Shown piece after piece: positions 38,564 through 64,000 of a stretch of DNA of 64,000 nucleotides. The stretch lies in sequence record PV611058.1; one strand, 5' to 3'. A program made the position numbers and the translations under genes. The notes below the pieces were generated by a model. The model saw only the letters and a list, made by a program, of their open reading frames with translations. It made no database searches and was not told where the DNA came from. The stretch's first letter is position 1. The number at the start of each line of letters is the position of its first letter.

Positions 38564-38702
38564 CTTGTTCCTGATACTGTGTACCCAAATACATCAGTAC
38601 TTTTAATTCTTTGAATTCAGTACTATATGAGTCGGTTTGCATCATTTTAGAAGAATATATATTGAATAGTTTAGCAATATCATCTTGGTCTATTATTTTC
38701 AT
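38511..38702 (-). CDS. family B outlier
   Basis: YLGTQYQEQVV. Confidence 0.8.
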   Translation of the reverse strand: MKIIDQDDIAKLFNIYSSKMMQTDSYSTEFKELKVLMYLGTQYQEQVVKEYIDSLQKDIRYVQ

Positions 38703-38907
38703 ATATTCTCTTCTGGATTAGTTCCTGTAAGTGCTGAATATAACCCTTCATTGCAACATCCTGTTTGTTAGAGCCAACGAAGAACAATAGCTTAAAGTCA
38801 TGGTAATCCATTTTTGGTTTAGTAGTGAACCATATGTCCCACACTGCACTCACAGTTCTCATGTATTCAATTCGATTAAATGTTTTTGAATACTTCATCG
38901 AAATCAA
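38680..38907 (-). CDS. family B outlier
   Basis: FVGSNKQDVAM. Confidence 0.75.
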   Translation of the reverse strand: MISMKYSKTFNRIEYMRTVSAVWDIWFTTKPKMDYHDFKLLFFVGSNKQDVAMKGYIQHLQELIQKRIYENNRPR

Positions 38908-46468: not shown

Positions 46469-46469
46469 A

Positions 46470-47706: not shown

Positions 47707-47708
47707 AC

Positions 47709-47739
47709 AAAAAAAGCCCATATCTTACGATACAGGCAT
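47709..47739 (-). terminator. intrinsic terminator
   Basis: GCCTGTATC-GTAA-GATATGGGC followed by T-run. Confidence 0.8.
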
Positions 47740-50248: not shown

Positions 50249-50254
50249 ATATTA

Positions 50255-50335
50255 TTACCTATTGATGGATACATCGTCATTGTCTTCTAATTCAACATAA
50301 ATCATATCTTTTGTATAAAGCATTTTATACTTCAT
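50255..50335 (-). pseudogene. 26 aa truncated remnant of the 49441-49752 paralog
   Basis: MKYKMLYTKDMIYVELEDNDDVSINR* versus MKYKILYTLTLIYVELESDSD. Confidence 0.7.
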
Positions 50336-51276: not shown

Positions 51277-51629
51277 CCGTAATGAATAGGATGATTTTTG
51301 TCTGAAACAGGAATAAAATATAAAGATGTACTGGGGTTATAACTGAATAAATCGTTGTTACCAATTGTAAAATGTGATAACTCAATCTTCCTTGTACCTG
51401 TACTTGGACGAAGAACATTCTTAACACCGAAGACTGTACCTTGATATTTCTCGGAAAATTCAAACAATGCATCTGCAATTAAATCACGAAACTCCGCATG
51501 TATGGTTTCAAAAAAATCTATATTACACGATGTTTTAATATCCTTGAACTCCTTATATAAAGAGCTTCTTGTATTCAAAAGAAATATTACTTTTTTAAGA
51601 TCCTGAACTATTTCTGGATTCATATTCAT
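51219..51629 (-). CDS. hypothetical protein
   Basis: 136 aa; EKYQGTVF is family D-like. Confidence 0.7.
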   Translation of the reverse strand: MNMNPEIVQDLKKVIFLLNTRSSLYKEFKDIKTSCNIDFFETIHAEFRDLIADALFEFSEKYQGTVFGVKNVLRPSTGTRKIELSHFTIGNNDLFSYNPSTSLYFIPVSDKNHPIHYGWIISYTINGTEYPIKWHD

Positions 51630-51846
51630 TTATCTCATTCTGTAACTTAAGCATCAAAATTTGCATATTAATTTTTTGTACAAGATGATTGAGAAATTTC
51701 TGTACTGTATCTTCTTGTTCTTTTGTACCAAGATAAAATAACATATTAAATTCAGATAATCTCAGAGCGAAATCTTCCTCTCCACCTTGTAAACAAAAAT
51801 CCCTGTACTTTGATGCATACAAATAACGGTTTATTTTTTTGTACAT
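51595..51846 (-). CDS. family B outlier
   Basis: YLGTKEQEDTV. Confidence 0.8.
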   Translation of the reverse strand: MYKKINRYLYASKYRDFCLQGGEEDFALRLSEFNMLFYLGTKEQEDTVQKFLNHLVQKINMQILMLKLQNEINEYESRNSSGS

Positions 51847-52823: not shown

Positions 52824-53198
52824 CTAGTATTGCACTGTTCTAATGAAAGTACCTTTACTCATGGATTTAAGCTTATGAACCTCTTCCTGTATACCCTTGA
52901 TTAACCCTAAAGGTATAGGTAAATCATGTACTAAGCTGTACTGAAAGTATTCTTCTTCAGATAAAGTACTAACATCTGGAATGCCAATTTTAGTTAGATA
53001 ATCTTGATGTGTTGACCAATAAATTATATCTTCAGTACTATTGTACTCCCCATATACTGAACAATATTGATGAATATCTTTCCTGTACCCTTGAGCAATA
53101 AAGAACTTATCTACTGCATTACCAGCATTAATAGAATTCACTTCGATTGTCACAGTACTTGAGCTTGTTTTTCCTTTACTATGCATATTAATCCCCAA
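52824..53198 (-). CDS. family A paralog
   Basis: LSEEEYFQYSLVHD. Confidence 0.85.
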   Translation of the reverse strand: MGINMHSKGKTSSSTVTIEVNSINAGNAVDKFFIAQGYRKDIHQYCSVYGEYNSTEDIIYWSTHQDYLTKIGIPDVSTLSEEEYFQYSLVHDLPIPLGLIKGIQEEVHKLKSMSKGTFIRTVQY

Positions 53199-53374
53199 AT
53201 TAGATATCGAACACTATCAGCTTGATAGTTAGTTCCTACTGTGTGTTTTAATATTAACTCATCTTTCAGTACTGAACATTCTGCATTAGATATAGGAAGA
53301 GAATTAATTCTTTGAATTTCTGGTCGCAAAATACCGCGAAGCTTGCGGTAATCTTCGTATGATAATATTTTCAT
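53150..53374 (-). CDS. family B outlier
   Basis: MKILSYEDY...VGTNYQA. Confidence 0.8.
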   Translation of the reverse strand: MKILSYEDYRKLRGILRPEIQRINSLPISNAECSVLKDELILKHTVGTNYQADSVRYLIWGLICIVKEKQAQVL

Positions 53375-53377: not shown

Positions 53378-53719
53378 TCAGTACTCAACGATGTGTTCTT
53401 CATAACCATTAAACTCCGGTTTAGTTTCTTTCATTAGGACTACCATTTTATGTACTAATGGCATAGGAAATTCTAAATCCCATACTAATGATTCTTGAAA
53501 GTATTCTTCTTCAGATAAAGTACTTAAATCTTTAATATCAACGTGCTTGTATATTTTCTTTTCGTAATTAAGAAATGATATATATAAATCATTAACATAA
53601 GAATCATAAGTAATTGTGAATGGCTTACCCTTGTAGTCCATTACATCTTTACATAGACTGCATTTGATATATGTATGTTCTTCTGAACTGTATACATTGA
53701 GTTGTATATTAGTTTTCAT
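53378..53719 (-). CDS. family A paralog (recent duplicate)
   Basis: LSEEEYFQESLVWD; C-half nearly identical to 53734-54072. Confidence 0.9.
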   Translation of the reverse strand: MKTNIQLNVYSSEEHTYIKCSLCKDVMDYKGKPFTITYDSYVNDLYISFLNYEKKIYKHVDIKDLSTLSEEEYFQESLVWDLEFPMPLVHKMVVLMKETKPEFNGYEEHIVEY

Positions 53720-53733
53720 AGTTACCTTATATA

Positions 53734-54072
53734 TTAATACTCAACGATGTGTTCTTCATAACCATTAAACTCCGGTTTAGTTTCTTTCATTAGTACTATC
53801 ATCTTATGTACTAATGGCATAGGAAACTCCAAATCCCATACTAATGATTCTTGAAAGTATTCCTCTTCAGATAAAGTACTTAAATCTTCAATGTCAATGT
53901 GTTCGTATATGTTATATTTGTAATCAGCAAAAGATATATAAAAACCTCTTGTATTATCATAAGTAAGTGCAAATGGCTTACCTTTGTAGTCCATTACAGA
54001 GTTACATGTATGGCATTTGATGTATGTACTTGCAAATGATTTATATACCTTGAGTTTTATATTAGTTTTCAT
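53734..54072 (-). CDS. family A paralog (recent duplicate)
   Basis: LSEEEYFQESLVWD. Confidence 0.9.
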   Translation of the reverse strand: MKTNIKLKVYKSFASTYIKCHTCNSVMDYKGKPFALTYDNTRGFYISFADYKYNIYEHIDIEDLSTLSEEEYFQESLVWDLEFPMPLVHKMIVLMKETKPEFNGYEEHIVEY

Positions 54073-54346
54073 ATTTCTCTTTATTAGCTTGTTTAGATTG
54101 TGTGGTTTTATAGTGAATGAAATCTATTAATGTAATCAAGTACAACGTCAAATAGTACTCTTGTTGATCTGTACCTAATGATACAAAGAACTTGTGCTCA
54201 TAGATTAAAACCTGTTTCTCTTCAAATGGACATTTAATCCTCTGTATAGGCTTAAGTAAATGATAGTACTTATTAAATCTATGATACATTTCTAGTTCTG
54301 TCAGTACTTTCATATTAAACACGTACTCCATTAGCAGTAGCATCAC
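54062..54346 (-). CDS. family B paralog
   Basis: LGTDQQEYYL; true start probably MKVLT. Confidence 0.8.
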   Translation of the reverse strand: MMLLLMEYVFNMKVLTELEMYHRFNKYYHLLKPIQRIKCPFEEKQVLIYEHKFFVSLGTDQQEYYLTLYLITLIDFIHYKTTQSKQANKEKYEN

Positions 54347-54536
54347 GTAAAGCTAACAAATACTTCTGTACTGCTTGCTCTTGATGATCTGTACCTAAAA
54401 GTATATACATCCATAATTCACTGTAATGTACATCTTGTGTATAAGGGTTGTTGTAACTTTTTGATAATATAGCATCAAATTCAGATGCATGAACCCTTGC
54501 GAACTTAAGCATATCTTGTTGTGTTATGATTCTCAT
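54315..54536 (-). CDS. family B paralog
   Basis: LGTDHQEQAV. Confidence 0.85.
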   Translation of the reverse strand: MRIITQQDMLKFARVHASEFDAILSKSYNNPYTQDVHYSELWMYILLGTDHQEQAVQKYLLALRDATANGVRV

Positions 54537-54748
54537 ATCTTTTCCTGTACTATCTGTATAAGAATACCTATGTGTGAATTAACAGTTCTCTCTTGATGCT
54601 GTGTTCCTAAGAGTGTCAGTACTATCATATCTGAACGCAAAAGATTTTTCTGAAGTTCACTTATATCAGTTCTTGAATCAAGTGCCATATATTTGTGATT
54701 ATTCTTCCTGAATAGTGCCAAGTACTCTTGATTTGATATTTCCTTCAT
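54533..54748 (-). CDS. family B paralog
   Basis: LGTQHQERTV. Confidence 0.85.
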   Translation of the reverse strand: MKEISNQEYLALFRKNNHKYMALDSRTDISELQKNLLRSDMIVLTLLGTQHQERTVNSHIGILIQIVQEKI

Positions 54749-54984
54749 AGTTTATCCCTGATGCCATTTAAAAGTGCTCTAATATGCTCCTGTACGAATT
54801 TGTACTGACTGTCTGTTCCTAGAGTGAGTAGTAATCTTAAATCTGAACTTTTGATATGATATTCTAAATCATTATTTGATTCTTGCATCAGTTTCTTAAA
54901 GGATGAGAAGTTTGCAGCCATTAGTTCAATGTATTCTGCTGTTCCTAGGGGTTTGTGTATTGGCTGTTTGTGCTGTCTGTGCAT
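54745..54984 (-). CDS. family B paralog
   Basis: LGTDSQYKFV. Confidence 0.8.
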   Translation of the reverse strand: MHRQHKQPIHKPLGTAEYIELMAANFSSFKKLMQESNNDLEYHIKSSDLRLLLTLGTDSQYKFVQEHIRALLNGIRDKL

Positions 54985-55196
54985 TTTAATTTTATTACCC
55001 TTTTGAGTGTATTAATGTAATTATACACATTGGCTTCTTGATAGTTTGTTCCTAGAGTAGCTTGAACGTAGATTTCATTTAACTTAATAATTTTATCAGT
55101 ATCTGGAAGTTTTGATGTGTTAATGGCAAATAACTTCGAAAACAGTCCATTTATGATTGTTAGGTATTCTACTTCGGTAATGATTCGCATTTGCAT
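54945..55196 (-). CDS. family B paralog
   Basis: LGTNYQEANV. Confidence 0.85.
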   Translation of the reverse strand: MQMRIITEVEYLTIINGLFSKLFAINTSKLPDTDKIIKLNEIYVQATLGTNYQEANVYNYINTLKRVIKLKCTDSTNSQYTNP

Positions 55197-55402
55197 TGGA
55201 TAAACCTTTTTAGTTCTTTGATGTAATCATTAATATTACATTCTTGATAGTTAGTCCCTAGGGTAGAATTAACATAGATTTCACTCATTAGAATATTTTT
55301 TTCTTCATCAGGTAAATCTGTGGTCTTTGCTATATACAATTTTAGAATTAAACTACTTAATAGTTCGTGGTATTCACTTGGTGAAAGGATTTTCATTTGC
55401 AT
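55169..55402 (-). CDS. family B paralog
   Basis: LGTNYQECNI. Confidence 0.85.
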   Translation of the reverse strand: MQMKILSPSEYHELLSSLILKLYIAKTTDLPDEEKNILMSEIYVNSTLGTNYQECNINDYIKELKRFIQCKCESLPK

Positions 55403-55608
55403 GTTCTCAGTACAGATTCTTTAAGTTCATCGATGTAGTCCTCAACGAATTGCTCTTGGAAGTTAGTTCCAATATATAAAAGAACTCTTAAATCTGCTCT
55501 AAGTAACTCTTTTTCATCATCATCTATATCAGACAATGTTATGTTTAAGAATTTACTTGTATTAAAGATTAACAATTCTGTTTGTTCACTGTGGCTTAAA
55601 ATTTTCAT
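55393..55608 (-). CDS. family B paralog
   Basis: IGTNFQEQFV. Confidence 0.85.
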   Translation of the reverse strand: MKILSHSEQTELLIFNTSKFLNITLSDIDDDEKELLRADLRVLLYIGTNFQEQFVEDYIDELKESVLRTCK

Positions 55609-55816
55609 AATCTCTTTTTGCTTTCCTCGACAGTAGGTACAAATACGATTCTTCGTATTGTGCTTGGAAGTTTGTGTTTAAGAGTCGAAACAACTTCTGT
55701 TCTTCTAGAACGAGTTGCTTATCTTCATAACAACGGTAGCGTATCAACTTTTTGTATTCGATGTTGATTACATCCATTACTATAAGCCCATGTTCATCAT
55801 CTGTCAAGTGCTTCAT
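55586..55816 (-). CDS. family B paralog
   Basis: LNTNFQAQYE. Confidence 0.85.
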   Translation of the reverse strand: MKHLTDDEHGLIVMDVINIEYKKLIRYRCYEDKQLVLEEQKLFRLLNTNFQAQYEESYLYLLSRKAKRDYENFKPQ

Positions 55817-56055
55817 GCTTTTTTTCTTTTCCTGATGTGTTTAGTTAAAAGGTATATTAGTTTTCTGATGTATTCTTCCTGATAGTTTGTTCCTAGGAGT
55901 GCAAGAAGTTTTGCTTCAACTAAAGCTAATTGACGTTCTTCAAATGTGTGTTCCAGTATGTACTTTGGGTTTGATTTTTTAGAAATTGCACTATTAGTTT
56001 TCATTACAATCTTATGATATTCATTAACTGTTAGGATTTTTAAATTCTTGAGCAT
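55813..56055 (-). CDS. family B paralog
   Basis: LGTNYQEEYI. Confidence 0.85.
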   Translation of the reverse strand: MLKNLKILTVNEYHKIVMKTNSAISKKSNPKYILEHTFEERQLALVEAKLLALLGTNYQEEYIRKLIYLLTKHIRKRKKA

Positions 56056-56281
56056 GTATCTTTTCCTTTATAGAGAATTTAAGATATCGAAGCATACTTT
56101 CAATGTAATACTCTTGTCTGTCAGTTCCAAGAAAGTACAGGAGTTGAATGTATAAAACTTCTGCACTCCTTTCGGCATGTGACTTGTTTGTGTCGTTTGG
56201 AAGTTGATTTGTAAGTTTTCTGGATTTAATTAATCGTTCTTTTAACTCATCGTCTGTTAAGTATTTCATTTCATTTTGCAT
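56024..56281 (-). CDS. family B paralog
   Basis: LGTDRQEYYI. Confidence 0.85.
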   Translation of the reverse strand: MQNEMKYLTDDELKERLIKSRKLTNQLPNDTNKSHAERSAEVLYIQLLYFLGTDRQEYYIESMLRYLKFSIKEKIHAQEFKNPNS

Positions 56282-56501
56282 TTACTTTTTCCTTAATACT
56301 CATTACAAGATGTTCAATCATATTTTGAACCATAAATTCTTGTTTATCAGTTCCAAGAACGTATGGTAGCTTCTGAAACAATACATTCGCAGACATTTCA
56401 TATATTGATTGATTTGGAACGAACTTAAGAGTAATGTTATTGGCTTTTAACATCTTCTCTTGAAATTCTTCATTCGTTAAGTATATCATTTCACTTTGCA
56501 T
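56271..56501 (-). CDS. family B paralog
   Basis: LGTDKQEFMV. Confidence 0.85.
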   Translation of the reverse strand: MQSEMIYLTNEEFQEKMLKANNITLKFVPNQSIYEMSANVLFQKLPYVLGTDKQEFMVQNMIEHLVMSIKEKVNAK

Positions 56502-56727
56502 TTACTTTTTCCATAATAGTAATTTTGAGATATTTAATTATACGTTCAATGTGATACTCTTGCCTATCAGTTCCAAGAATGTATGGTAATCTTTGGAATA
56601 AAACTTCTGCACTCCTTTCCGCTGGGGTTTGGTTTGGGTTGTGTGGAAGATATTTTGTAAGTTTTTTGGATTTATCTAGTCTTTCTGTTAACTCATCATG
56701 TGTTAAGTATATCATTTCATTTTGCAT
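56491..56727 (-). CDS. family B paralog
   Basis: LGTDRQEYHI. Confidence 0.85.
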   Translation of the reverse strand: MQNEMIYLTHDELTERLDKSKKLTKYLPHNPNQTPAERSAEVLFQRLPYILGTDRQEYHIERIIKYLKITIMEKVNAK

Positions 56728-56963
56728 TTAATGTTCCTTACGTAAATTGTCTGGATTAAACAATCAATCCAAGTTTGAATATATTGGTTTTGATACTGTG
56801 TGCCTAAGAGACTCTGCATTTTAAACTCTGCTTCAAGTTCATATCTCTTTTCTATAGAAAAGCTCAAATGACCATATTCTTTATCGTATCTTCTCAGTGC
56901 TTCCCCAATTCTATCAAATCTTTCTGCTAATCTGATGTTATTCACAATATTCATCGCATTCAT
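56712..56963 (-). CDS. family B paralog
   Basis: LGTQYQNQYI. Confidence 0.85.
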   Translation of the reverse strand: MNAMNIVNNIRLAERFDRIGEALRRYDKEYGHLSFSIEKRYELEAEFKMQSLLGTQYQNQYIQTWIDCLIQTIYVRNIKCKMK

Positions 56964-57238
56964 CGATCAGTACACCTCAGTGGTTGGGTCATTTGATAAA
57001 AGTACAGCTTACCTTTGATTTCCAATAGTAACTCCGCGATTAAGCGATTTACTTCTGGCTCTTGATAGTTTGTTCCCAAGAATACACCCATCTTTAACTC
57101 ACGCATCATAATCATTTTCTTACTGTGTTGAATTTTTTGGTTGTGATAGATTGTATTACGTTTGTGTGTAATTTTTGTCATACGCTCGGTATATTCATCT
57201 TTACTTAAATTGATCATTTGCATGTTCATCAACCTCAC
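56960..57238 (-). CDS. family B paralog
   Basis: LGTNYQEPEV. Confidence 0.85.
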   Translation of the reverse strand: MRLMNMQMINLSKDEYTERMTKITHKRNTIYHNQKIQHSKKMIMMRELKMGVFLGTNYQEPEVNRLIAELLLEIKGKLYFYQMTQPLRCTDR

Positions 57239-57449
57239 ATTTATTTTCGATACAAATCATGAGTTCTCTAAGATAGTTTTTTATCTTACCTTCCTGATGG
57301 TTCGTCCCCAGGAAGTTGCATAACTCTGCTTCTATTATTTTGATTCTTCTGGTGTCAGGTTTCAATCTTTTGTTATTGAAGATTTGAATCCTTATATCCC
57401 TTGATGCATTTAAACGTTTTTGATATTCATGGAAAGATAAATTAATCAT
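57201..57449 (-). CDS. family B paralog
   Basis: LGTNHQEGKI. Confidence 0.85.
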   Translation of the reverse strand: MINLSFHEYQKRLNASRDIRIQIFNNKRLKPDTRRIKIIEAELCNFLGTNHQEGKIKNYLRELMICIENKCEVDEHANDQFK

Positions 57450-57673
57450 TTACTTTGTATCTCTCTCTTGAGGGCATCAATTAACAACAGTACAGCATTC
57501 TCTTGATAGTTTGTTCCTAAGACTGAAAGCATCTTAATCTCATTTACTACAATCAACTTCTTTGAGCGTTCAATAATGTTACTATTATAAACGGCGTTAC
57601 GTGCTGGATAAGTTTTTGCAAGACGTTCATAATATTCATCTTTACTTAAATTAATCATTTGCATTTCTCGCAC
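57446..57673 (-). CDS. family B paralog
   Basis: LGTNYQENAV. Confidence 0.85.
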   Translation of the reverse strand: MREMQMINLSKDEYYERLAKTYPARNAVYNSNIIERSKKLIVVNEIKMLSVLGTNYQENAVLLLIDALKREIQSK

Positions 57674-57899
57674 GTTTACTTAGTTTACTTCCAATGTATT
57701 TCTTAAGTGTAATTATATATTCCTCTACATAATACTCCTGATAGTTAGTTCCTAAGAATGCACATAGCTTTGTCTCACGCTTCATAATCATCTTATTTTC
57801 GTGTTTGTTTACTTCACCGAAATGGATTTCATTAAGTTTAGGTAAGATTTTTGCTTGGCGTTCTTTATATTCAGATTTACTTAAATTAATCATTTGCAT
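57651..57899 (-). CDS. family B paralog
   Basis: LGTNYQEYYV. Confidence 0.85.
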   Translation of the reverse strand: MQMINLSKSEYKERQAKILPKLNEIHFGEVNKHENKMIMKRETKLCAFLGTNYQEYYVEEYIITLKKYIGSKLSKRARNAND

Positions 57900-58108
57900 T
57901 TACTTTTGACCTCCTTGACTAATGCATCAACCCACATGTCTATATACATTTGTTGATAGTTTGTCCCTATGAGTGCCCCTGCATAGAGTTCAGCTATCAA
58001 TGTATGTTTTAGGTTGGCAGGGATGCTCTTATCAGATTGAATCTTTACTCTTCTGTTGGCACATGTTTTCAGGAGTCTGATGTATTCAAAGCCTTGTAAT
58101 TTTCTCAT
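57890..58108 (-). CDS. family B paralog
   Basis: IGTNYQQMYI. Confidence 0.85.
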   Translation of the reverse strand: MRKLQGFEYIRLLKTCANRRVKIQSDKSIPANLKHTLIAELYAGALIGTNYQQMYIDMWVDALVKEVKSKCK

Positions 58109-58320
58109 TCTTTTGATATCACCTTGTTACGTAAGGCACTTAACAATACGTCAGTGTAGATGTTTTGATAGTTTGTTCCTACGAATGCACCCAACTTCAT
58201 TTCAGCTATTATAACACATTTATCCTCTTGTGCAATAGACTTGTCTAAAGAAATACTAACAACTTTCCTTCTTATAGCTTGTAACCTCCAATGATACTGA
58301 TACTCATTTAGTGTTATCAT
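58105..58320 (-). CDS. family B paralog
   Basis: VGTNYQNIYT. Confidence 0.85.
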   Translation of the reverse strand: MITLNEYQYHWRLQAIRRKVVSISLDKSIAQEDKCVIIAEMKLGAFVGTNYQNIYTDVLLSALRNKVISKE

Positions 58321-58555
58321 TCTCTCGCCTCCATATCTCGGTTCTAATGTGTTGACATTGTGCTTCGATGAACATATCTATTGATTTGGCAATTGCGTTT
58401 TTATCTGTGCCTGTCATCAGTACAAGCATCTCGGCCTCACAGTGAAGTAAACGCATGATATCATAGGGTAATATTCCAGATACCGTGTCATAGTGTTTCT
58501 GTGCCAGTGTCTGCAATAGTTTACAATACATTTTGTGATTTAGTCTGTGTCGCAT
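58304..58555 (-). CDS. family B paralog (divergent)
   Basis: MTGTDKNAIA. Confidence 0.75.
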   Translation of the reverse strand: MRHRLNHKMYCKLLQTLAQKHYDTVSGILPYDIMRLLHCEAEMLVLMTGTDKNAIAKSIDMFIEAQCQHIRTEIWRRENDNTK

Positions 58556-58812
58556 TGTTTATTCCATTCTTTTTTGGCCTTGATGGTTTTATATTGGATT
58601 TGGTTTCTTAATGCTGATAAGTATCGTTGAATGAACAGATCTTGATAGTTTGTTCCAATGAATTTCATAAGATAAAGTTCACCGTTGATAACATCCACTT
58701 CAGGTGCACCATATAAGGCATTGTTTTTTCTAAGGGCATGGATTAAAGAGAATAGGGCAGTTTGATACTCAACTCCTGATAAAGTCTTCATGTTTTGTGA
58801 GCCAATAATCAT
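58540..58812 (-). CDS. family B paralog
   Basis: IGTNYQDLFI. Confidence 0.85.
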   Translation of the reverse strand: MIIGSQNMKTLSGVEYQTALFSLIHALRKNNALYGAPEVDVINGELYLMKFIGTNYQDLFIQRYLSALRNQIQYKTIKAKKEWNKQCDTD

Positions 58813-59050
58813 CTAGTTTATCCTGTATAACATTCATTAATTGTTCGACATATTCTGTGCAAAACTTATCTTGATATTGAGTCCCCATAAAGTACAGCAA
58901 CCATAGCTCATTAACTTTAGCTCGCATTTGGTTCCATGTAAGGCTGGGGTCATCGTAGACTATCCTTGCTATAGGGGTTAGTTTACGGACTATAGTTTCA
59001 TATTCATCTAGTGTTAAGTGTTTCATTTGCCTAAATCCCTGACATGACAT
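58769..59050 (-). CDS. family B paralog
   Basis: MGTQYQDKFC. Confidence 0.85.
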   Translation of the reverse strand: MSCQGFRQMKHLTLDEYETIVRKLTPIARIVYDDPSLTWNQMRAKVNELWLLYFMGTQYQDKFCTEYVEQLMNVIQDKLDDYWLTKHEDFIRS

Positions 59051-59247
59051 TTTAAGGCCGTGATGTGGTTGTCTACCATAACCTCCTGATAGTTTGTTCC
59101 TACAAATGGTATTAATGTTGAGTCTGTTAGTATAACATACTTTTCATTGGATGTTAGTGATTCATCATCGTAAACTTGAAGTCTAAAGTTCTTCCCTTGT
59201 TCTAATCGTTTAAGATATTCTTGAGTGTTTATGTCTTTCATTTGCAT
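59023..59247 (-). CDS. family B paralog
   Basis: VGTNYQEVMV. Confidence 0.85.
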   Translation of the reverse strand: MQMKDINTQEYLKRLEQGKNFRLQVYDDESLTSNEKYVILTDSTLIPFVGTNYQEVMVDNHITALKCHVRDLGK

Positions 59248-59456
59248 TTGTCCCTTATTAAATCAGTGAGGGCAACTATGTGTGCAACAACATACTCTTC
59301 CTGAAAGTTCGTCCCCAGTACAGCCATCATGCGTATATCGGTGGTGTTTATCCTGTGTTCCCTTACACATAAACCTTCTGTGTGAGGAAGTGTAAAATAT
59401 TTGTTTATTGCAGCAACGATAATTTTATTCTTCTCGGAATTACTTAAATGTTTCAT
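59238..59456 (-). CDS. family B paralog
   Basis: LGTNFQEEYV. Confidence 0.85.
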   Translation of the reverse strand: MKHLSNSEKNKIIVAAINKYFTLPHTEGLCVREHRINTTDIRMMAVLGTNFQEEYVVAHIVALTDLIRDKCK

Positions 59457-59665
59457 AGTTTACTCTTAATGTATTTCTGGAGTGCAATTATATACTCATT
59501 CAAGAAATGCTCCTGATAGTCTGTGCCGAGGAATGCACCCAATAGTATATCATTTTCCAATACTAATGCTAAGTTCAAATCATCAGTCTCTTCATATACT
59601 ATGAGAATTTCAAGTTGTCTTGCAGCGACGCGTTCGGTATATAGATTTGAGTTAATGCTATTCAT
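59453..59665 (-). CDS. family B paralog
   Basis: LGTDYQEHFL. Confidence 0.85.
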   Translation of the reverse strand: MNSINSNLYTERVAARQLEILIVYEETDDLNLALVLENDILLGAFLGTDYQEHFLNEYIIALQKYIKSKL

Positions 59666-59874
59666 AGTTTACTCTTAATGTAATTCTGGAGTGCAATTAA
59701 GTATTCCCCTACATAATACACCTGAAAGTCTGTATCCAAAAATGCACCCATAAGTAAATCTTTTTCTAATACCCTTGATAAGTTAAGGTCTGCATTTGAA
59801 TTGTATATAATTAAGATTTTATTCTGGACAGAAACAAAACGTATCTTATATTCTTCTGGTGTTAAAAAAATCAT
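59662..59874 (-). CDS. family B paralog
   Basis: LDTDFQVYYV. Confidence 0.85.
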   Translation of the reverse strand: MIFLTPEEYKIRFVSVQNKILIIYNSNADLNLSRVLEKDLLMGAFLDTDFQVYYVGEYLIALQNYIKSKL

Positions 59875-60080
59875 AGTTTACTCTTAATATCTTCTATTAA
59901 AAAATGAATCCAATCGTCAACATACTCTTCCTGATGGTTTGTGTTCAGTACAGCCAACATGCGGATCTCTGCTCTTGCAACTTGGATTTCAGTTTTAGAA
60001 AGGTCTTTGCTGATATCAAACATTAAGTCCATGTATTTCAAGATAAGACCGAATGATTGGGTTCGTGTTATAGTTTTCAT
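59871..60080 (-). CDS. family B paralog
   Basis: LNTNHQEEYV. Confidence 0.85.
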   Translation of the reverse strand: MKTITRTQSFGLILKYMDLMFDISKDLSKTEIQVARAEIRMLAVLNTNHQEEYVDDWIHFLIEDIKSKL

Positions 60081-60277
60081 TGTTTCCTCGTGGACAATAT
60101 TTTATTTTTCAATGTATCCATATATTGAATCACCCATCTTTCCTGATAGTTAGTTCCCAAAGTAATCAAAAGGTATAACTCCATTCGTTCTACGTGTGTG
60201 TCTGTATTATAAATCTTTGTGAAGTTTTTACGTAACAGTTCTTGATAATCTTCTTTATTTAAAATACGCATTTTCAT
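60077..60277 (-). CDS. family B paralog
   Basis: LGTNYQERWV. Confidence 0.85.
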   Translation of the reverse strand: MKMRILNKEDYQELLRKNFTKIYNTDTHVERMELYLLITLGTNYQERWVIQYMDTLKNKILSTRKQ

Positions 60278-60471
60278 AGTCTACCTTTTATGTCCCTTCG
60301 TAATTCTTGTAAGTATAGTTCGATATACTTTTCTTGATAGTTAGTTCCTATGAAAAGTTTCATAACCAATTCACGCTTATATGCAATACCACGGATATGT
60401 GACATATGTAAGATATATGCCATGTTGGATATGAGTGTGTGGTTGTGCTCTTCTTGAGTTAAAATACGCAT
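60274..60471 (-). CDS. family B paralog (first gene of array)
   Basis: IGTNYQEKYI. Confidence 0.85.
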   Translation of the reverse strand: MRILTQEEHNHTLISNMAYILHMSHIRGIAYKRELVMKLFIGTNYQEKYIELYLQELRRDIKGRL

Positions 60472-60501: not shown

Positions 60502-60529
60502 ATAATATACGATTCATATAAAAAGTCAA
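60502..60529 (-). promoter_or_regulatory. sigma70-like promoter driving family B array
   Basis: TTGACT-16nt-TATTAT, SD GGAG before first ATG. Confidence 0.65.
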
Positions 60530-60622
60530 TAACATTTTATTAGTAATACCCCTTTATCGAAGTCGCTAAGGTTACCCGCCCTTTAGCCCCCTACGCATTT
60601 TGCCATAGTCCAATCCCTTTTT

Positions 60623-60698
60623 ATTCATAAAAGTCAAGGGATTACCTATGCATTTTTTTAACGCTGAAGTTTAAAAATGTCTTGACTTTTTTATGATT
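60623..60698. repeat. imperfect inverted repeat
   Basis: ATTCATAAAAGTCAAG ... CTTGACTTTTTTATGATT. Confidence 0.6.
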
Positions 60699-60720
60699 CA
60701 GTACTAAATCCTTTTACGCA

Positions 60721-60930
60721 TTAATCCTTCGTTACGCTTACGATTATCTGTGTATCCCCATAGTCCTGCCATACTTCCACGCCAGCCGTCGCCCTGGTTA
60801 GTCGTGCTGTCATCTGCTTAATGGTCTTAGGCTTTAGTGGAACCTGTTGCAGTACTGTACGCATAGCACCATCGACGTTATCATGTACGCCTGCAATAGT
60901 GCCTAGAACGTTGTATACTGTATAGATCAT
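60721..60930 (-). CDS. early-region hypothetical protein
   Basis: 69 aa with SD GGAG. Confidence 0.75.
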   Translation of the reverse strand: MIYTVYNVLGTIAGVHDNVDGAMRTVLQQVPLKPKTIKQMTARLTRATAGVEVWQDYGDTQIIVSVTKD

Positions 60931-60954
60931 GTGTATGTACTCCTGATATAGTTA

Positions 60955-60974
60955 AGGCCGCTAGAGAGCGGCCT
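60955..60974. repeat. intergenic GC-rich hairpin
   Basis: AGGCCGCT-AGAG-AGCGGCCT, no T-tract. Confidence 0.75.
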
Positions 60975-60998
60975 ATGATGTTTGATGATGTGTAACGC

Positions 60999-61400
60999 TT
61001 ACAACCCTAAGATAGTGCGTGCTTCGTTACGTTCCGTACACAGCTGCATGATGTGAGCAAGTAAGTCCTTGCTAATGTATCCGGTGTTCATAGCTTCACG
61101 AATAGATACATCATAAGCACCGAACCCAGTGCGAACGATACGCACATCATTCAGGTTAGTATTATAGATACCGCCGAGATCAACGGCTTCGAATACTACA
61201 TCAACAGAATATTCATTGTTGCCATCGTGGAAGTTTTCCAGTGCAATAGTATTGGAAACCGCCCAACGTTTGCAGTTTCCAATGATGCGGCACTGTTCCG
61301 GTTGGATAGTGCCATTACTTACAGCGTACTCCAGTGCATCTTTACCAAAAGTCCGAGCCAGTACTAAAACGTCAGCGAAGGAAGTGATTGAGAAGGTCAT
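60999..61400 (-). CDS. early-region hypothetical protein
   Basis: start MTFSITS after SD AAGGAG. Confidence 0.8.
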   Translation of the reverse strand: MTFSITSFADVLVLARTFGKDALEYAVSNGTIQPEQCRIIGNCKRWAVSNTIALENFHDGNNEYSVDVVFEAVDLGGIYNTNLNDVRIVRTGFGAYDVSIREAMNTGYISKDLLAHIMQLCTERNEARTILGL

Positions 61401-61420
61401 GATAAAACTCCTTAATTTAG

Positions 61421-61487
61421 GAGGGAGAACCATTTCCCCCTCTCTATGTAAAACATTATACATGAATCTAAGTACTATGCAAGTACT
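61421..61487 (-). promoter_or_regulatory. early promoter plus leader stem-loop cassette
   Basis: TTGCAT-16-TATAAT; GAGGGGGAA-ATGG-TTCTCCCTC; two AGTACT. Confidence 0.85.
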
Positions 61488-61489
61488 TT

Positions 61490-61822
61490 TTACATTTTAA
61501 TACCTGGATTCAGGTAGCGGTGAGATCCATATTCTGGATCGGTTTCGGTCCAGTACTGTAAATCTATAGTACCTTTAGCGTTAATCTTATCTACCAGCTT
61601 ATTCATCTTAGCGTATACTACATCAGCATCGATGCGTTTAAAGCCAGTGGCTTTAGTGAAGTAGTAGTGATTTGCTTCACTATCATTCAGGATGTACCGA
61701 GAACCGTTTGCCGTTTGTGCGATAATGATTGAGTATTCTACGTTACGGTCGAGGCCGTCGATGAATACAGAGGAAACATTAGTACGGATGAAAGCTTTAA
61801 CGATAGCGATTGAAGTAGTCAT
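61490..61822 (-). CDS. early-region hypothetical protein
   Basis: 110 aa with SD AGGAG. Confidence 0.8.
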   Translation of the reverse strand: MTTSIAIVKAFIRTNVSSVFIDGLDRNVEYSIIIAQTANGSRYILNDSEANHYYFTKATGFKRIDADVVYAKMNKLVDKINAKGTIDLQYWTETDPEYGSHRYLNPGIKM

Positions 61823-61842
61823 TTTGAATCTCCTAACTTTGT

Positions 61843-61904
61843 GGGCCGTCGCACCATTGCCGCCCTACGAGATACATTATCGCAGTACTGATATACTTTG
61901 TCAA
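61843..61904 (-). promoter_or_regulatory. early promoter plus leader stem-loop cassette
   Basis: TTGACA-17-GATAAT; GGGC.GCA-ATGG-TGC...GCCC; AGTACT in spacer. Confidence 0.8.
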
Positions 61905-62017
61905 TACTTTTTTTATTAATAGTTTTAGTTCCACCAGCAGATAGTTACTCACCGTTATTAACTATATATTTTGGATACACCTATGCACCCTGTGGGCTAG
62001 TTTTTGTCTATGCGTAT

Positions 62018-62057
62018 ATAATAGCAAAGGGACTGACCGGAGTCAATCCCTTTTTTT
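62018..62057. promoter_or_regulatory. hairpin/terminator overlapping minus-strand promoter
   Basis: AAAGGGACTGAC-CGGA-GTCAATCCCTTT with T-run on +; TTGACT-17-TATTAT on -. Confidence 0.65.
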
Positions 62058-62068
62058 ATTCTTTTTTG

Positions 62069-62269
62069 TTAGATGATTCTCCAATCATCAACGATCATGG
62101 TAAGATACCGAACCAGTGATTCGAGTGATTCGTGTTCTCGATAGTCTGCCGCTCCACCAGCGGTACAAGTACAGCCGATTAAGCCGTTTTGTAGTTCCTG
62201 GATCTTTACGTCGATCTGGTTGGCTTTAGCTTCTTTCAGTACTTCAACCAGGGCGATAGCGATAGACAT
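62069..62269 (-). CDS. early-region hypothetical protein
   Basis: 66 aa with SD GGAG. Confidence 0.75.
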   Translation of the reverse strand: MSIAIALVEVLKEAKANQIDVKIQELQNGLIGCTCTAGGAADYREHESLESLVRYLTMIVDDWRII

Positions 62270-62291
62270 AATGTTTTACTCCAAACTATTG

Positions 62292-62352
62292 GCGGGAGAA
62301 CTATTCCCCCGCTCTATGTAAAACATTATACATTACTGGTTAGTACTGTCAA
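62292..62352 (-). promoter_or_regulatory. early promoter plus leader stem-loop cassette
   Basis: TTGACA-16-TATAAT; GCGGGGGAA-TAG-TTCTCCCGC; AGTACT overlaps -35. Confidence 0.9.
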
Positions 62353-62359
62353 ATAGTTT

Positions 62360-62617
62360 TTATGAAATATCTTCGATGTAGTCGGCCCATTTCATTTTTT
62401 CAGTACTGTCAATGGCTACCGGATTATTTGGATCAAACCATTCACCATCACCGCAATACATACCCACGGCTACGGTTTTATAGCCATCCTGGGCCGTACA
62501 CCACGACATTGCACGATAGATATGGCCTTTAACTGGTTGCAGTACTGGTAACGTTTTATGGTCTTCTACGTAGGCCATAGCTTGAGGATTTACCCGATAT
62601 TGTGTGAACTGATCCAT
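62360..62617 (-). CDS. early-region hypothetical protein
   Basis: 85 aa. Confidence 0.8.
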   Translation of the reverse strand: MDQFTQYRVNPQAMAYVEDHKTLPVLQPVKGHIYRAMSWCTAQDGYKTVAVGMYCGDGEWFDPNNPVAIDSTEKMKWADYIEDIS

Positions 62618-62645
62618 TATGTTTCCCCTTGTAGTTAGTAAAGTT

Positions 62646-62681
62646 ATTACATCAGTACTATCAAGCTATGTCAATAGTACT
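62646..62681 (-). promoter_or_regulatory. early promoter
   Basis: TTGACA-17-TGTAAT; AGTACT in spacer and upstream of -35. Confidence 0.75.
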
Positions 62682-62693
62682 GAAATAAAACTT

Positions 62694-62918
62694 TTAGATT
62701 AGATTATTGAGGCCGTCAATGGTAGACTCACTTTCTTCTTTCTCCCATTGTCGGTAGTACTTCCATGCTTCATGATAGGTGGCGATTAGTTCATCTTTTT
62801 GATCCTGGTTACATGCCAGTACTGAATCACGGTGAGCGGTGTTATAGATAGAATCGAATGATTTCTTCTCTTCTGCCAGGTTAGCTACTTCCCGCATCAG
62901 TTCATCAAAGTTAGCCAT
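62694..62918 (-). CDS. early-region hypothetical (coiled-coil) protein
   Basis: 74 aa with SD AAGGAG. Confidence 0.8.
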   Translation of the reverse strand: MANFDELMREVANLAEEKKSFDSIYNTAHRDSVLACNQDQKDELIATYHEAWKYYRQWEKEESESTIDGLNNLI

Positions 62919-62936
62919 TTTATTACTCCTTTTAGT

Positions 62937-62998
62937 GGGGGAGGATATCTCCCCCTATGCAAAACATTATACTTTGTTTTAGTTATTATGCAAGTACT
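62937..62998 (-). promoter_or_regulatory. early promoter plus leader stem-loop cassette
   Basis: TTGCAT-16-TATAAT; GGGGGAG...CTCCCCC; AGTACT abuts -35. Confidence 0.85.
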
Positions 62999-63249
62999 TT
63001 TTTCATATAAACATTAAATTCTACACCGCCGTAACCTTCCACGATGATATGTTTTGCGTTATCACGTTTGCACATAGTGAAACCATCGTTTACGTGTTTT
63101 GCATTTTCCAGGGCGACATCACCGATAGCGGCACATACGGCACTAATAACAGTATTCCGCAAAGTACTGGTATCATTGGCGGTCATAGTAGTTTGCAGTA
63201 CTACGTTGTCGTATACGTGTGCATTGATAGTGATTTCGATAGTGTTCAT
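62986..63249 (-). CDS. early-region hypothetical protein
   Basis: start MNTIEIT after SD AGGAG. Confidence 0.8.
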   Translation of the reverse strand: MNTIEITINAHVYDNVVLQTTMTANDTSTLRNTVISAVCAAIGDVALENAKHVNDGFTMCKRDNAKHIIVEGYGGVEFNVYMKKVLA

Positions 63250-63267
63250 GGTGTATCTCCTGGACTT

Positions 63268-63334
63268 GAGGGGAAACCATTTCCCCCTCTCGATATAAAA
63301 CATTATACGTTAATCTAACTACAATGCAAGTACT
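63268..63334 (-). promoter_or_regulatory. early promoter plus leader stem-loop cassette
   Basis: TTGCAT-16-TATAAT; GAGGGGGAA-ATGG-TTTCCCCTC; AGTACT abuts -35. Confidence 0.85.
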
Positions 63335-63336
63335 TT

Positions 63337-63528
63337 TTAAATTTTATTTCCGATATAGTCCGGCATGTTCTTTTCAGTCATACGCTTTGCTAATGTCTGC
63401 ATATGGCTTATAGCGTTCAAGGTGTCTTCCTCCAGGGATGAATCAAGATAATCAGGATCATTCTTCACCTTGCAATGATTATGATATCGTAGTACTGCCA
63501 GTACTTTTTTAACTTCTTCAACTGTCAT
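63337..63528 (-). CDS. early-region hypothetical protein
   Basis: 63 aa. Confidence 0.7.
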   Translation of the reverse strand: MTVEEVKKVLAVLRYHNHCKVKNDPDYLDSSLEEDTLNAISHMQTLAKRMTEKNMPDYIGNKI

Positions 63529-63797
63529 AATAAGTACCCCACTTCGTTAGCTTTCAGGTTAGTATCAATCATCAGTGGATTTTTGTAGTTCACAAAACGA
63601 GTAGTTTTCTCGATAGCGAAACCCATATAATCCAGCTTACTAACAGTACATTCATTCTTAAAAACTTCTTTCGCTGCATCGATGGCTGATTGCATGGATA
63701 ACCGCCCATCTAAGTTAATATTTCCAAATGATCCACCAGCAGAAGTAGGATTACCGTTCATATCTTTAATGATCATAGTAGCGGAGTAGCTGGACAT
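63525..63797 (-). CDS. early-region hypothetical protein
   Basis: 90 aa with SD AAGGA. Confidence 0.8.
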   Translation of the reverse strand: MSSYSATMIIKDMNGNPTSAGGSFGNINLDGRLSMQSAIDAAKEVFKNECTVSKLDYMGFAIEKTTRFVNYKNPLMIDTNLKANEVGYLL

Positions 63798-63821
63798 AAT
63801 TTTGTTTCCTTTTATTGGTGT

Positions 63822-63880
63822 GGGGAGAACTATTCTCCCCTTGATGTAAACTATTATACAGTACTGATATACTTTGTCAA
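63822..63880 (-). promoter_or_regulatory. early promoter plus leader stem-loop cassette
   Basis: TTGACA-16-TATAAT; GGGGAGAA-TAG-TTCTCCCC; AGTACT in spacer. Confidence 0.9.
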
Positions 63881-63886
63881 ATACTT

Positions 63887-64000
63887 TTATTCGCCCATAT
63901 AGATTAGATTATCATCGCCTACATAGGGATCGCAAACGTTGATTTCTTCGCAGTACTTCGTGAATACATCGCCATAGTGACCTAAACCACGATCCCAAAA
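63887..64000 (-). CDS. 3' end of a hypothetical protein (partial)
   Basis: manual translation ...FWDRGLGHYGDVFTKYCEEINVCDPYVGDDNLIYMGE*. Confidence 0.65.
   Translation of the reverse strand, partial: FWDRGLGHYGDVFTKYCEEINVCDPYVGDDNLIYMGE

What the first reader, a model, noticed from the sequence alone, without database searches (positions are those of the whole stretch)
54062..60471. Uninterrupted tandem array of 29 small LGT(N/D)xQE helical proteins (family B)
Seen: 29 consecutive ORFs of ~65-95 aa share the layout M(K/R)-x-L-(S/T)-x-x-EY, variable helix, E/D-x-x-hydrophobic, (L/I/V)GT(N/D/Q)(Y/H/F/R)Q(E/D), then an amphipathic helix (Y/I..L...I..K). One sigma70-like promoter sits at 60502-60529, and I saw no internal terminator. 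Codons of the core vary synonymously (GGA/GGG/GGC, ACA/ACT/ACG, CAA/CAG), so conservation is at protein level. Inference: a hyper-expanded family of small helical binders with a constant core and variable surfaces, the size typical of phage anti-defence or decoy proteins. Many diversified copies suggest an arms race against a polymorphic host target.
Basis: partly seen in the sequence, partly recalled or inferred. Interest (0 to 1): 0.88.

Follow-up and report, generated by a model that had tools for sequence, protein, structure and literature searches.

The report
Thirty-gene orphan small-protein array, jumbo phage
A jumbo E. coli phage carries about 30 back-to-back diverged copies of one small three-helix protein gene of unknown fold and function, forming the first operon next to its terminal repeat; the array is real, ancient and under purifying selection, but an ongoing arms race is not supported.

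Summary
Window 54062-60471 holds 29 contiguous minus-strand genes of one family. A 30th lies at 53150-53374, and three weak relatives lie further off. The window is Escherichia phage WPEC3, an Asteriusvirus of the PBECO4/121Q type. The family is phrog_4148 (function unknown) and has no Pfam, NCBIfam, PADLOC or PDB match. AlphaFold gives a very confident three-helix domain (pLDDT 97) with no fold relative outside the family. Only 79 sequence clusters exist among 1.84 billion proteins, all traced ones from RaK2-like jumbo phages: 27-33 copies per Asteriusvirus, 12 in RaK2, and arrays on uncultured contigs. Paralogues are old (mean 25% identity) and pair one-to-one between WPEC3 and 121Q. dN/dS is 0.33-0.46, against 0.21 for neighbouring genes, and no site exceeds 1. 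Genes are translationally coupled behind one sigma70-like promoter, 40 nt inside the unique genome at the boundary of the ~21 kb direct terminal repeat. Members are absent from the phAPEC6 virion proteome. Best reading: an early, non-structural panel of stable, target-specific small binders for host takeover or counter-defence. Function is untested and expression is unproven. Hua et al. 2017 noted such an array in 121Q in one sentence.

The parts
60569..64000 (.). Inner part of the long direct terminal repeat (DTR); its boundary is at 60569
   Evidence: [quoted passage not shown] Window 60600-63600 occurs twice at 100% in the WPEC3 record, and record base 1 equals window 60569.
60502..60529 (-). 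Sigma70-like promoter (TTGACT, 16 nt, TATTAT), 40 nt inside the unique region and 30 nt upstream of the first ATG
   Evidence: Conserved in EC.P1, WPEC5, ph0011, phAPEC6 and 121Q. Promoter-like sites are enriched in gaps of this block, 2.6 against 0.93 per kb, p = 0.006. Function not shown.
60274..60471 (-). Family member 1 (65 aa), GGAG ribosome-binding site
   Evidence: folded, pLDDT 97.3
60077..60277 (-). Member 2 (likely start 60271)
59871..60080 (-). Member 3
59662..59874 (-). Member 4
59453..59665 (-). Member 5
59238..59456 (-). Member 6
59023..59247 (-). Member 7 (likely start 59241); missing as a unit in some natural variants
   Evidence: joint 59008>59229 in runs X1 and X2
58769..59050 (-). 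Member 8 (likely start 59026)
58540..58812 (-). Member 9 (likely start 58791)
58304..58555 (-). Member 10, the outlier (TGTDKNAIAKS in place of GTNYQE)
58105..58320 (-). Member 11
57890..58108 (-). Member 12
57651..57899 (-). Member 13 (likely start 57893), best profile score; present, diverged or absent among close relatives
57446..57673 (-). Member 14 (likely start 57658)
57201..57449 (-). Member 15
56960..57238 (-). Member 16 (likely start 57217)
56712..56963 (-). Member 17 (likely start 56954); missing as a unit in a natural variant
   Evidence: joint 56730>56969 in run X1
56491..56727 (-). Member 18 (likely start 56715)
56271..56501 (-). Member 19 (likely start 56489)
56024..56281 (-). 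Member 20 (likely start 56269); members 18-20 form a young local sub-cluster
55813..56055 (-). Member 21
55586..55816 (-). Member 22 (NT in place of GT)
55393..55608 (-). Member 23
55169..55402 (-). Member 24 (likely start 55396)
54945..55196 (-). Member 25 (likely start 55190)
54745..54984 (-). Member 26
54533..54748 (-). Member 27
54315..54536 (-). Member 28
54062..54346 (-). Member 29 (likely start ATG 54313 with GGAG, not the GTG at 54346)
53378..54072 (-). Two genes of an unrelated 17-member family (LSEEExFQxSLV motif) in the same gap-free unit
   Evidence: unrelated to family B by hhalign, probability 0.3%
53150..53374 (-). Member 30, detached from the main run
   Evidence: E 1.5e-19
52824..53198 (-). 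Last gene of the gap-free unit (the third member of the 17-member family in this unit); the next promoter-like site (TTGACA-17-TATAGT, 52822-52794) follows
38511..38907 (-). Two distant family relatives (63 and 75 aa)
   Evidence: E 1.1e-11 and 4e-4
51595..51846 (-). Weak partial relative (profile positions 34-67)
   Evidence: E 6.9e-6

Best explanation
This is an ancient multigene family of an orphan ~65-85-residue three-helix domain. About 30 diverged paralogues sit in one translationally coupled operon, the first transcription unit of the unique genome, starting 98 nt inside the boundary of the ~21 kb direct terminal repeat of an Asteriusvirus jumbo phage. Shown: the family, its fold model, its narrow distribution, one-to-one orthology across the genus, purifying selection on every segment, gene packing, its position relative to the repeat, and its absence from a relative's virion proteome. 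Inferred: host sigma70 RNA polymerase transcribes the unit early from the promoter at 60529-60502. The products are soluble cytoplasmic proteins built on a constant scaffold: a hydrophobic core, a likely helix N-cap motif (LS/TxxEY) and the GT(N/D)xQE turn, with the N-terminal strand paired to the GT residues. Their exposed faces differ between paralogues but are conserved within each orthologue lineage. Each paralogue would therefore bind its own, fairly stable partner. The array would act as a fixed panel of small binders or inhibitors that take over or disarm host functions, with counter-defence as one option, and not as a fast-diversifying decoy set.
For: Family and packing. Fold: pLDDT 97.3, helices 6-27, 29-39 and 46-64, with residue 2 bridged to T43; BFVD models of other members superpose at TM 0.73-0.98 despite 23-58% identity. 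Orphan status. Distribution: 79 clusters in 1.84 billion proteins; 27-33 copies in Asteriusviruses and 12 in RaK2; arrays on uncultured contigs. Age and orthology: mean paralogue identity 25%, with more than 20 strongly supported WPEC3-121Q pairs. Selection: dN/dS 0.33-0.46; 0.37 against 0.21 for 110 other genes, p = 0.0007; motif 0.18 and other segments 0.33-0.42. Soluble: maximum hydropathy 1.38. Not in virions: phAPEC6 Table 1 lists no gp46x-48x. Early-region context: promoter in the gap and gap enrichment; repeat boundary; CBB paper placing RpoD-type promoters in a block of short genes suspected to be early (PMC5259590); a T4-like 'spackle' annotation in the adjacent repeat.
Against: There is no direct evidence of transcription or translation. 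The raw RNA-seq run laid no reads, and metatranscriptome contigs cannot exclude DNA carry-over. No partner is known. The promoter is a 10/12 consensus match only. The direction of DNA entry is unknown, so 'first to enter' is not established. The self-association test gave no verdict. dN/dS is higher than for neighbouring genes, so part of the family may be only weakly constrained. Small proteins are easily missed by virion mass spectrometry.
Confidence: 0.45

Rival explanations
1. One reading: a rapidly diversifying set of anti-defence or decoy proteins in an ongoing arms race with a polymorphic host target.
For: Small size, likely early position, many diversified copies. dN/dS is higher than for neighbours. 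Copy number and content vary: 25-31 in the main array, unit-length deletions in natural variants, and member 13 is present, diverged or absent among close relatives.
Against: No position or segment reaches omega of 1. Paralogues are old and kept one-to-one between WPEC3 and 121Q. There is no recent burst of near-identical copies; maximum paralogue identity is 62%. Charge is heterogeneous, so no common mimicry. No link to any known defence or anti-defence family was found.
Confidence: 0.2
2. A panel for competition between phages (superinfection exclusion, or inhibitors of rival phages' proteins) and not directed at the host.
For: It sits beside a terminal repeat that a relative's annotation says carries a T4-like 'spackle' superinfection-immunity gene. 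Stable, distinct specificities would suit a set of conserved rival targets.
Against: No homology to known exclusion proteins. All members are predicted soluble and cytoplasmic, whereas many known exclusion proteins are membrane-bound or periplasmic (the comparison is from my own knowledge).
Confidence: 0.1
3. Phage-directed regulators or nucleic-acid-binding proteins (as Iyer et al. proposed for the ~35-copy zinc-ribbon expansion of phage G) that tune the phage's own transcription or DNA organisation.
For: 21 of 30 members are basic with pI above 8. There is a precedent in phage G (PMC7824862).
Against: Nine members are acidic or neutral, with pI from 4.4 to 6.7. No helix-turn-helix or other DNA-binding fold match was found. 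There is no conserved basic patch in the profile; the conserved residues are hydrophobic core and helix caps.
Confidence: 0.1
4. Largely dispensable duplicated DNA that inflated the genome once the capsid had enlarged (the ratchet idea of Hua et al. 2017), with little specific function per copy.
For: Hua et al. cite such arrays as evidence of genome growth by tandem duplication (PMC5646251). Constraint is weaker than for neighbours. Single units are lost in nature.
Against: Every segment has omega well below 1. All 30 frames are intact. 23-30 orthologues were found in six of the seven compared phages and 16 in 121Q at the 60% identity threshold, where the tree pairs more than 20. Arrays persist in RaK2 and in uncultured relatives.
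Confidence: 0.1
5. Subunits of a non-virion hetero-oligomeric assembly, since translationally coupled neighbours often interact.
For: Tight coupling and a shared conserved scaffold.
Against: The monomer model is self-contained, with pTM 0.80. The self-association job gave no verdict and counts neither way. Copy content varies between strains, which is awkward for an obligate assembly.
Confidence: 0.05

Closest known systems
phrog_4148 (PHROGs v4, function unknown), the hypothetical proteins 121Q gp319-341 and phAPEC6 gp467c-489c
   Same: It is the same family: 29 of 30 members match, best E 3.6e-25. The arrays are syntenic in 36 phage records.
   Different: Nothing differs. This is simply the uncharacterised database entry for these genes, with no function, structure or description attached.
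[quoted passage not shown] 2017, PMC5646251; Iyer et al. 2021, PMC7824862)
   Same: A very large tandem expansion of one small protein in a jumbo phage. The 121Q remark most likely refers to this family, which has 27 profile matches in 121Q.
   Different: The papers give one sentence each. The phage G proteins are zinc ribbons, whereas this family has no conserved cysteines (0-3 per member) and an all-helical fold. I could not confirm that Hua et al. meant this exact array.
Multigene families next to the genome termini of large eukaryotic DNA viruses (e.g. the MGF families of African swine fever virus, poxvirus terminal host-range families); from my own knowledge
   Same: Tandem paralogue arrays placed beside terminal repeats, copy content varying between isolates, non-structural, thought to act on the host.
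   Different: No sequence or fold relationship, and different hosts and biology. This is an analogy of genome architecture only.
Tandem arrays of small helical immunity proteins in bacterial polymorphic-toxin loci (Zhang, Aravind and colleagues 2012; from my own knowledge)
   Same: Rows of small, mostly helical, diversified inhibitor genes, each specific for one target variant.
   Different: No Pfam immunity family match, no fold match to colicin-type immunity proteins, and no toxin gene nearby.
Early host-takeover gene blocks driven by host-type promoters (T4 early regions, T5 pre-early genes in the terminal repeat, SPO1 host-takeover module, the suspected early block CBB_390-546)
   Same: A long run of short genes behind sigma70-type promoters at or next to a long terminal repeat.
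   Different: Those blocks are mixtures of unrelated genes, while here 30 are paralogues. Unlike the T5 pre-early genes, the array lies just outside the repeat. Early timing has not been measured for any Asteriusvirus.

Membership tests
phrog_4148 | Significant match to the family HMM over most of its length | tested here: met
   29 of 30 members match, best E 3.6e-25; member 1 covers profile positions 1-69 of 74
Any Pfam, NCBIfam or PADLOC family | Score above the curated cut-off | tested here: not met
   Pfam best E 0.017, scattered single hits below cut-off. NCBIfam none. PADLOC one stray hit at E 0.0016 in 1 of 30 members.
Virion or structural proteins | Detected in purified particles | tested here: not met
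   phAPEC6 Table 1 (62 virion proteins) holds no gp46x, gp47x or gp48x, while the array is gp467c-gp489c. Caveat: small proteins are easily missed.
Known solved folds (helix-turn-helix regulators, colicin-type immunity proteins, anti-sigma AsiA-like and others) | Structural similarity clearly above background | tested here: not met
   Foldseek against PDB: best E 2.7. VIA-align: best Z 5.5, below the tool's stated noise level for helical models. Atlas TM at most 0.59, generic. PDB sequence profile: best E 1.1.
Anti-CRISPR or other anti-defence loci | Demonstrated inhibition of a defence system | not testable with these tools
   Needs plating assays against defence libraries
Anti-CRISPR or other anti-defence loci | Association with an Aca-type helix-turn-helix regulator gene | tested here: not met
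   Flanking genes 60721-60930, 60999-61463, 61490-61822 and 52824-53198 have no helix-turn-helix Pfam match. Only the nearest neighbours were tested.
Zinc-ribbon expansion of phage G | Conserved Cys/His zinc-binding motif | tested here: not met
   0-3 cysteines per member, none conserved
T5-type pre-early genes | Located inside the direct terminal repeat | tested here: not met
   The repeat ends at window 60569 and the first ATG is at 60471, so the array lies 98 nt outside it
Genes under diversifying (arms-race) selection | dN/dS above 1 gene-wide or at a class of sites | tested here: not met
   Pooled 0.33-0.46. Per-position maximum 0.83. Segments 0.18-0.42. Two single genes give about 1.1-1.45, but from fewer than 6 synonymous changes. 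Formal site models were not run.

The most novel reading that the evidence does not exclude
The array encodes a new protein fold used as a modular recognition scaffold. It would be a phage-encoded repertoire of about 30 fixed-specificity binders, delivered as the first operon after genome entry, each neutralising a different host factor. Host range of these broad-spectrum jumbo phages would then be set in part by which members are present.
Probability: 0.2. Interest if true: 0.85.

Novelty: new variant of a known kind. Interest (0 to 1): 0.6.

Why it matters
About 1.7% of a 384 kb genome is spent on 30 copies of one tiny domain, and selection has kept each copy distinct across a whole genus and beyond. 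That makes it a clean, tractable case of a viral multigene family in a bacterial system. If the members bind different host or defence proteins, the family would be a ready-made set of natural small inhibitors and a new compact scaffold. It would also help explain what the many unknown genes of jumbo phages do. The finding further qualifies the idea that such arrays are mere filler from genome expansion.

Tried and rejected
1. Self-association of member 1 (complex prediction, two copies): scores 0.75, 0.12 and 0.13, no verdict. It is evidence neither for nor against.
2. Expression from public reads: raw RNA-seq run X23 laid 0 reads, so it is no test. X1 is probably DNA. Wastewater metatranscriptome contigs (X2, X6) cover parts of the array but cannot exclude DNA.
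3. ESM Atlas feature search: no usable hit.
4. Remote homology between family B and the neighbouring 17-member family: rejected, hhalign probability 0.3%.
5. Whole-genome search under 'own': no genome is held for this window. I used the phage record via a handle instead.
6. Literature: four full-text searches and searches inside seven papers found no functional or transcriptomic study of this family or of any Asteriusvirus.
7. Considered and rejected: silent recombination cassettes (all copies have their own start, ribosome-binding site and intact frame, and are under purifying selection); membrane or secreted proteins (no hydrophobic segment); a recent 'accordion' amplification (maximum paralogue identity 62%, one-to-one orthologues).

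Full report
IDENTITY OF THE WINDOW. The stretch 54062-60471 is 100% identical to Escherichia phage WPEC3 (PV611058.1, 384,131 bp). It is 81-99% identical over 41-100% of its length to the 30 listed of the 36 matching jumbo phages of E. coli and Salmonella, among them PBECO4, 121Q, phAPEC6 and fEgEco12, genus Asteriusvirus. Every gene under the match is annotated 'hypothetical protein'. Window position equals record position minus 301,060.

THE OBSERVATION. They align as one family with the layout M-x-x-L-(S/T)-x-x-E-Y, a variable helix, (L/I/V)-G-T-(N/D)-x-Q-E, then an amphipathic helix. T48 is invariant, and M1, G47, Q51 and L62 are at least 90% conserved. A profile of the family finds 33 places in the whole 384 kb record, all inside this window. 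These are the 29, a detached 30th member at 53150-53374 (E 1.5e-19), and three weak relatives in the ORFs 38511-38702, 38680-38907 and 51595-51846.

The conserved residues use different synonymous codons in different copies: Gly GGA 17, GGG 5, GGC 3, GGT 2; Thr ACA 18, ACT 10, ACG 2; Gln CAA 19, CAG 10. Mean pairwise identity among the 29 is 25% (range 12-62%). Neighbours are slightly more alike, 31% at distance 1 against 24% at distance 4 or more, which is the signature of old local duplications.

GENE PACKING AND SIGNALS. Taking the ATG nearest the profile start, 14 of 28 junctions are 4-bp ATGA overlaps. The others overlap by 8-40 nt or leave 1-5 nt. Most starts are preceded by a GGAG, AGGA or GAG motif. 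Junction sequences recur (for example attaagagtaaactATG three times), giving homology for unit-length unequal crossover.

No gap longer than 45 nt exists between 60471 and 52824. The gap-free unit therefore holds 33 genes: 29 family members, two genes of an unrelated family, member 30, and one more gene of that unrelated family. The 249-nt gap upstream carries TTGACT-16-TATTAT at 60529-60502, followed by GGAG and the first ATG. This site is conserved in EC.P1, WPEC5, ph0011, phAPEC6 and 121Q.

Across 52.5-62.5 kb the simple promoter scan finds no more sites than shuffles do: 43 against 47.6. Across the whole window, however, minus-strand sites with at least 10 of 12 matches are 2.8-fold denser in intergenic gaps than in coding sequence (p = 0.006). 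Two gaps hold perfect 12/12 promoters. No convincing internal terminator is present. Promoter function is inferred, not shown.

POSITION IN THE GENOME. fEgEco12 is 98.6% identical to the window over the array. [quoted passage not shown] Its first array gene, g057, starts at 21,091. The last base of its right-hand repeat aligns to window 60569. In WPEC3 itself, window 60600-63600 occurs twice at 100% identity, and record base 1 corresponds to window 60569.

So window 60569-64000 is terminal repeat. The promoter lies 40 nt and the first ATG 98 nt inside the unique region, and transcription runs away from the repeat. The array is the first transcription unit of the unique genome. For the related phage CBB, the authors place RpoD-type promoters in a block of short hypothetical genes adjoining the terminal repeat and suspect that these are early host-takeover genes (PMC5259590). 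fEgEco12's repeat carries a gene annotated 'protein spackle'. These points make early expression plausible, but it has not been measured.

WHAT THE PROTEIN IS. Pfam, NCBIfam and PADLOC give nothing. PHROGs holds the family as phrog_4148, function unknown. AlphaFold2 on the 30-paralogue alignment gives a very confident model: pLDDT 97.3, pTM 0.80, helices 6-27, 29-39 and 46-64, and a one-residue bridge between residue 2 and T43 of the GT motif.

The two conserved motifs sit at helix starts. (S/T)-x-x-E before helix 1 fits the classical capping box. The G-T-(N/D)-x-Q turn precedes helix 3, where a capping role is looser: the box position holds Q, and the model pairs T43 with residue 2 in a bridge. 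Capping is my reading of the model plus general knowledge of capping boxes. The other conserved positions are hydrophobic with helical spacing. The constant part is therefore mostly the scaffold.

No solved structure resembles it above background. Foldseek's best E is 2.7. VIA-align's best Z is 5.5, under the tool's stated noise level for helical models. The PDB sequence profile's best E is 1.1. The ESM Atlas gives only generic helical overlaps. The viral structure library returns only the family's own members, at TM 0.73-0.98 with 23-58% identity, which shows the fold is shared across paralogues.

All members are soluble by hydropathy: the maximum 19-residue Kyte-Doolittle value is 1.38. pI runs from 4.4 to 10.0 and net charge from -7 to +10. 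None of phAPEC6's array genes (gp467c-gp489c) appears among its 62 virion proteins.

DISTRIBUTION AND HISTORY. An exhaustive profile search of 1.84 billion representatives finds only 79 clusters at E up to 0.001. Of the ten most distant clusters I looked up, the three that carry names are from Asteriusvirus or Klebsiella RaK2-type phages, and the rest come from metagenomes. Whole-record searches give 27 matches in 121Q, 32 in phAPEC6, 30 in Salmonella phage SD-15_S21, 33 in PBECO4, and 12 weaker, more scattered ones in RaK2. Two metagenomic contigs also carry tandem runs of 12-16 and 7-9 copies; L006, the only one compared, shares just 1-2% of its length with any sequenced phage.

In a maximum-likelihood tree, WPEC3 and 121Q members form more than 20 strongly supported one-to-one pairs. 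A few Asteriusvirus pairs have a sister in the uncultured contigs. Small lineage-specific clusters exist in RaK2, in contig L006 and among members 18-20 (short alignment, deep nodes unresolved). The expansion therefore predates the genus, and most copies have been kept as separate lineages.

Turnover does occur at the level of whole units. Reciprocal-best orthologues at 60% identity or more number 30, 29, 26, 26, 25, 23 and 16 of 30 in EC.P1, WPEC5, ph0011, phAPEC6, PBECO4, SD-15_S21 and 121Q. Member 13 is identical in three other phages, about 71% identical in 20 records, and about 50-60% identical in 10. Contigs of public runs skip 220, 238 and 427 nt, that is, one or two genes.

SELECTION. 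Pooled Nei-Gojobori dN/dS for orthologue pairs is 0.33-0.46 in seven genome comparisons. Against ph0011 the family gives 0.37 (28 genes), compared with 0.21 for 110 other orthologue pairs of the same window. Medians are 0.31 and 0.21, Mann-Whitney p = 0.0007. The paralogue-rich 38-53 kb block is similar, at 0.34.

Pooling 65 orthologue pairs by profile position, no position exceeds the synonymous rate; the maximum pN/pS is 0.83. The faster positions (6, 7, 10, 11, 17, 18, 21, 22 and 53, 56, 57, 60, 63, 65, 67) follow helical spacing, as exposed faces would. By segment, omega is 0.18 (95% bootstrap interval 0.12-0.25) for the turn/motif and 0.33-0.42 for the N-terminus, helix 1, the loop, helix 2 and helix 3. 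These segments differ strongly between paralogues, at 2.6-3.2 bits of entropy for the helices and the loop.

The genes are therefore real and constrained. Each paralogue's particular surface is conserved in its own lineage. There is no sign of pervasive diversifying selection, although formal site models were not run.

EXPRESSION. One raw RNA-seq run from a sample that holds the phage laid no reads on the array, so it is not a test. The best holder is probably DNA. Two metatranscriptomes hold fragments that could be DNA. Expression therefore remains unproven.

INTERPRETATION. The data fit an early, non-structural panel of small cytoplasmic proteins built on one scaffold, each with its own conserved face, hence each probably with its own partner. 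Host takeover or counter-defence is the most natural role, given the position behind a host-type promoter at the repeat boundary and the small size. This is inference, and I put it at about 0.45.

Rivals that remain possible are inter-phage competition, phage-directed regulation, weakly selected duplicated DNA, and a hetero-oligomeric assembly. The self-association test gave no verdict.

WHAT IS KNOWN. Hua et al. [quoted passage not shown] The phAPEC6 paper repeats this. With 27 matches in 121Q this is most likely the same array, though the paper does not say which genes.

No paper I could find describes the family's fold, its selection, its position at the repeat boundary or its function. The existence of the array is therefore not new. 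Its characterisation here is new: orphan fold, ancient one-to-one orthology, purifying selection on paralogue-specific faces, and its place as the first operon beside the terminal repeat. It is a bacterial-virus variant of the terminal multigene families known from large eukaryotic DNA viruses.

Noticed in passing
window 60569-64000: This part of the window is the inner end of the ~21-22 kb direct terminal repeat. It is nearly identical between WPEC3 and ph0011 (dS 0.003 over 6 genes), while the adjacent array has dS 0.26, so there is a sharp mosaic or recombination boundary at or near the repeat junction.
   Followed up: partly
window 61396-61492, 61965-62067, 62630-62697, 63269-63350: Short 60-110-bp intergenic elements are repeated many times, at 73-91% identity, throughout both copies of the terminal repeat. 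At least one (62053-62026) is a hairpin that contains a TTGACT -35 box and is followed by TATTAT. These may be repeated promoter or terminator cassettes of the early region.
   Followed up: no
window 13235-54072: A second paralogue family of 17 members (103-205 aa) has an invariant FQ within an LSEEExFQxSLV motif. It is scattered in small clusters, and three members sit in the same gap-free unit as the array (53378-53719, 53734-54072 and 52824-53198). It has no Pfam match and is unrelated to family B by profile comparison.
   Followed up: partly
window 33888-42422, 35601-50885 and 16531-17934: There are three further paralogue families, of 6, 6 and 3 members. Much of the window from 25 to 60 kb is built from multigene families of unknown function.
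   Followed up: no
window 59008-59229, 56730-56969, 57253-57681: Contigs of public runs join across these intervals, skipping 220, 238 and 427 nt. Natural variants therefore lack exactly one or two array genes, which is consistent with unequal crossover between the repeated gene junctions.
   Followed up: partly
L006 7448-16122 (ENA ERZ14189038 NODE_1, 101 kb) and L008 428-2894: Uncultured phage contigs carry their own arrays of the family; L006, the only one compared, shares just 1-2% of its length with any sequenced phage. One L006 neighbour gene has a ParE-like Pfam hit.
   Followed up: partly
L014 6001-6366 (RaK2 ORF362) and L015: In Klebsiella phage RaK2 the best family match is a 121-aa protein with about 50 extra C-terminal residues. 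It is conserved at 78-100% in 9 Klebsiella phage records. The other 11 RaK2 matches are scattered in small groups over about 18 kb and do not form one array.
   Followed up: partly
window 36081-36139 and 62270-62359: Perfect 12/12 sigma70 consensus promoters (TTGACA, 16-18 nt, TATAAT) sit in intergenic gaps of the leftward gene block. Eleven further gaps hold 10-11/12 matches.
   Followed up: no
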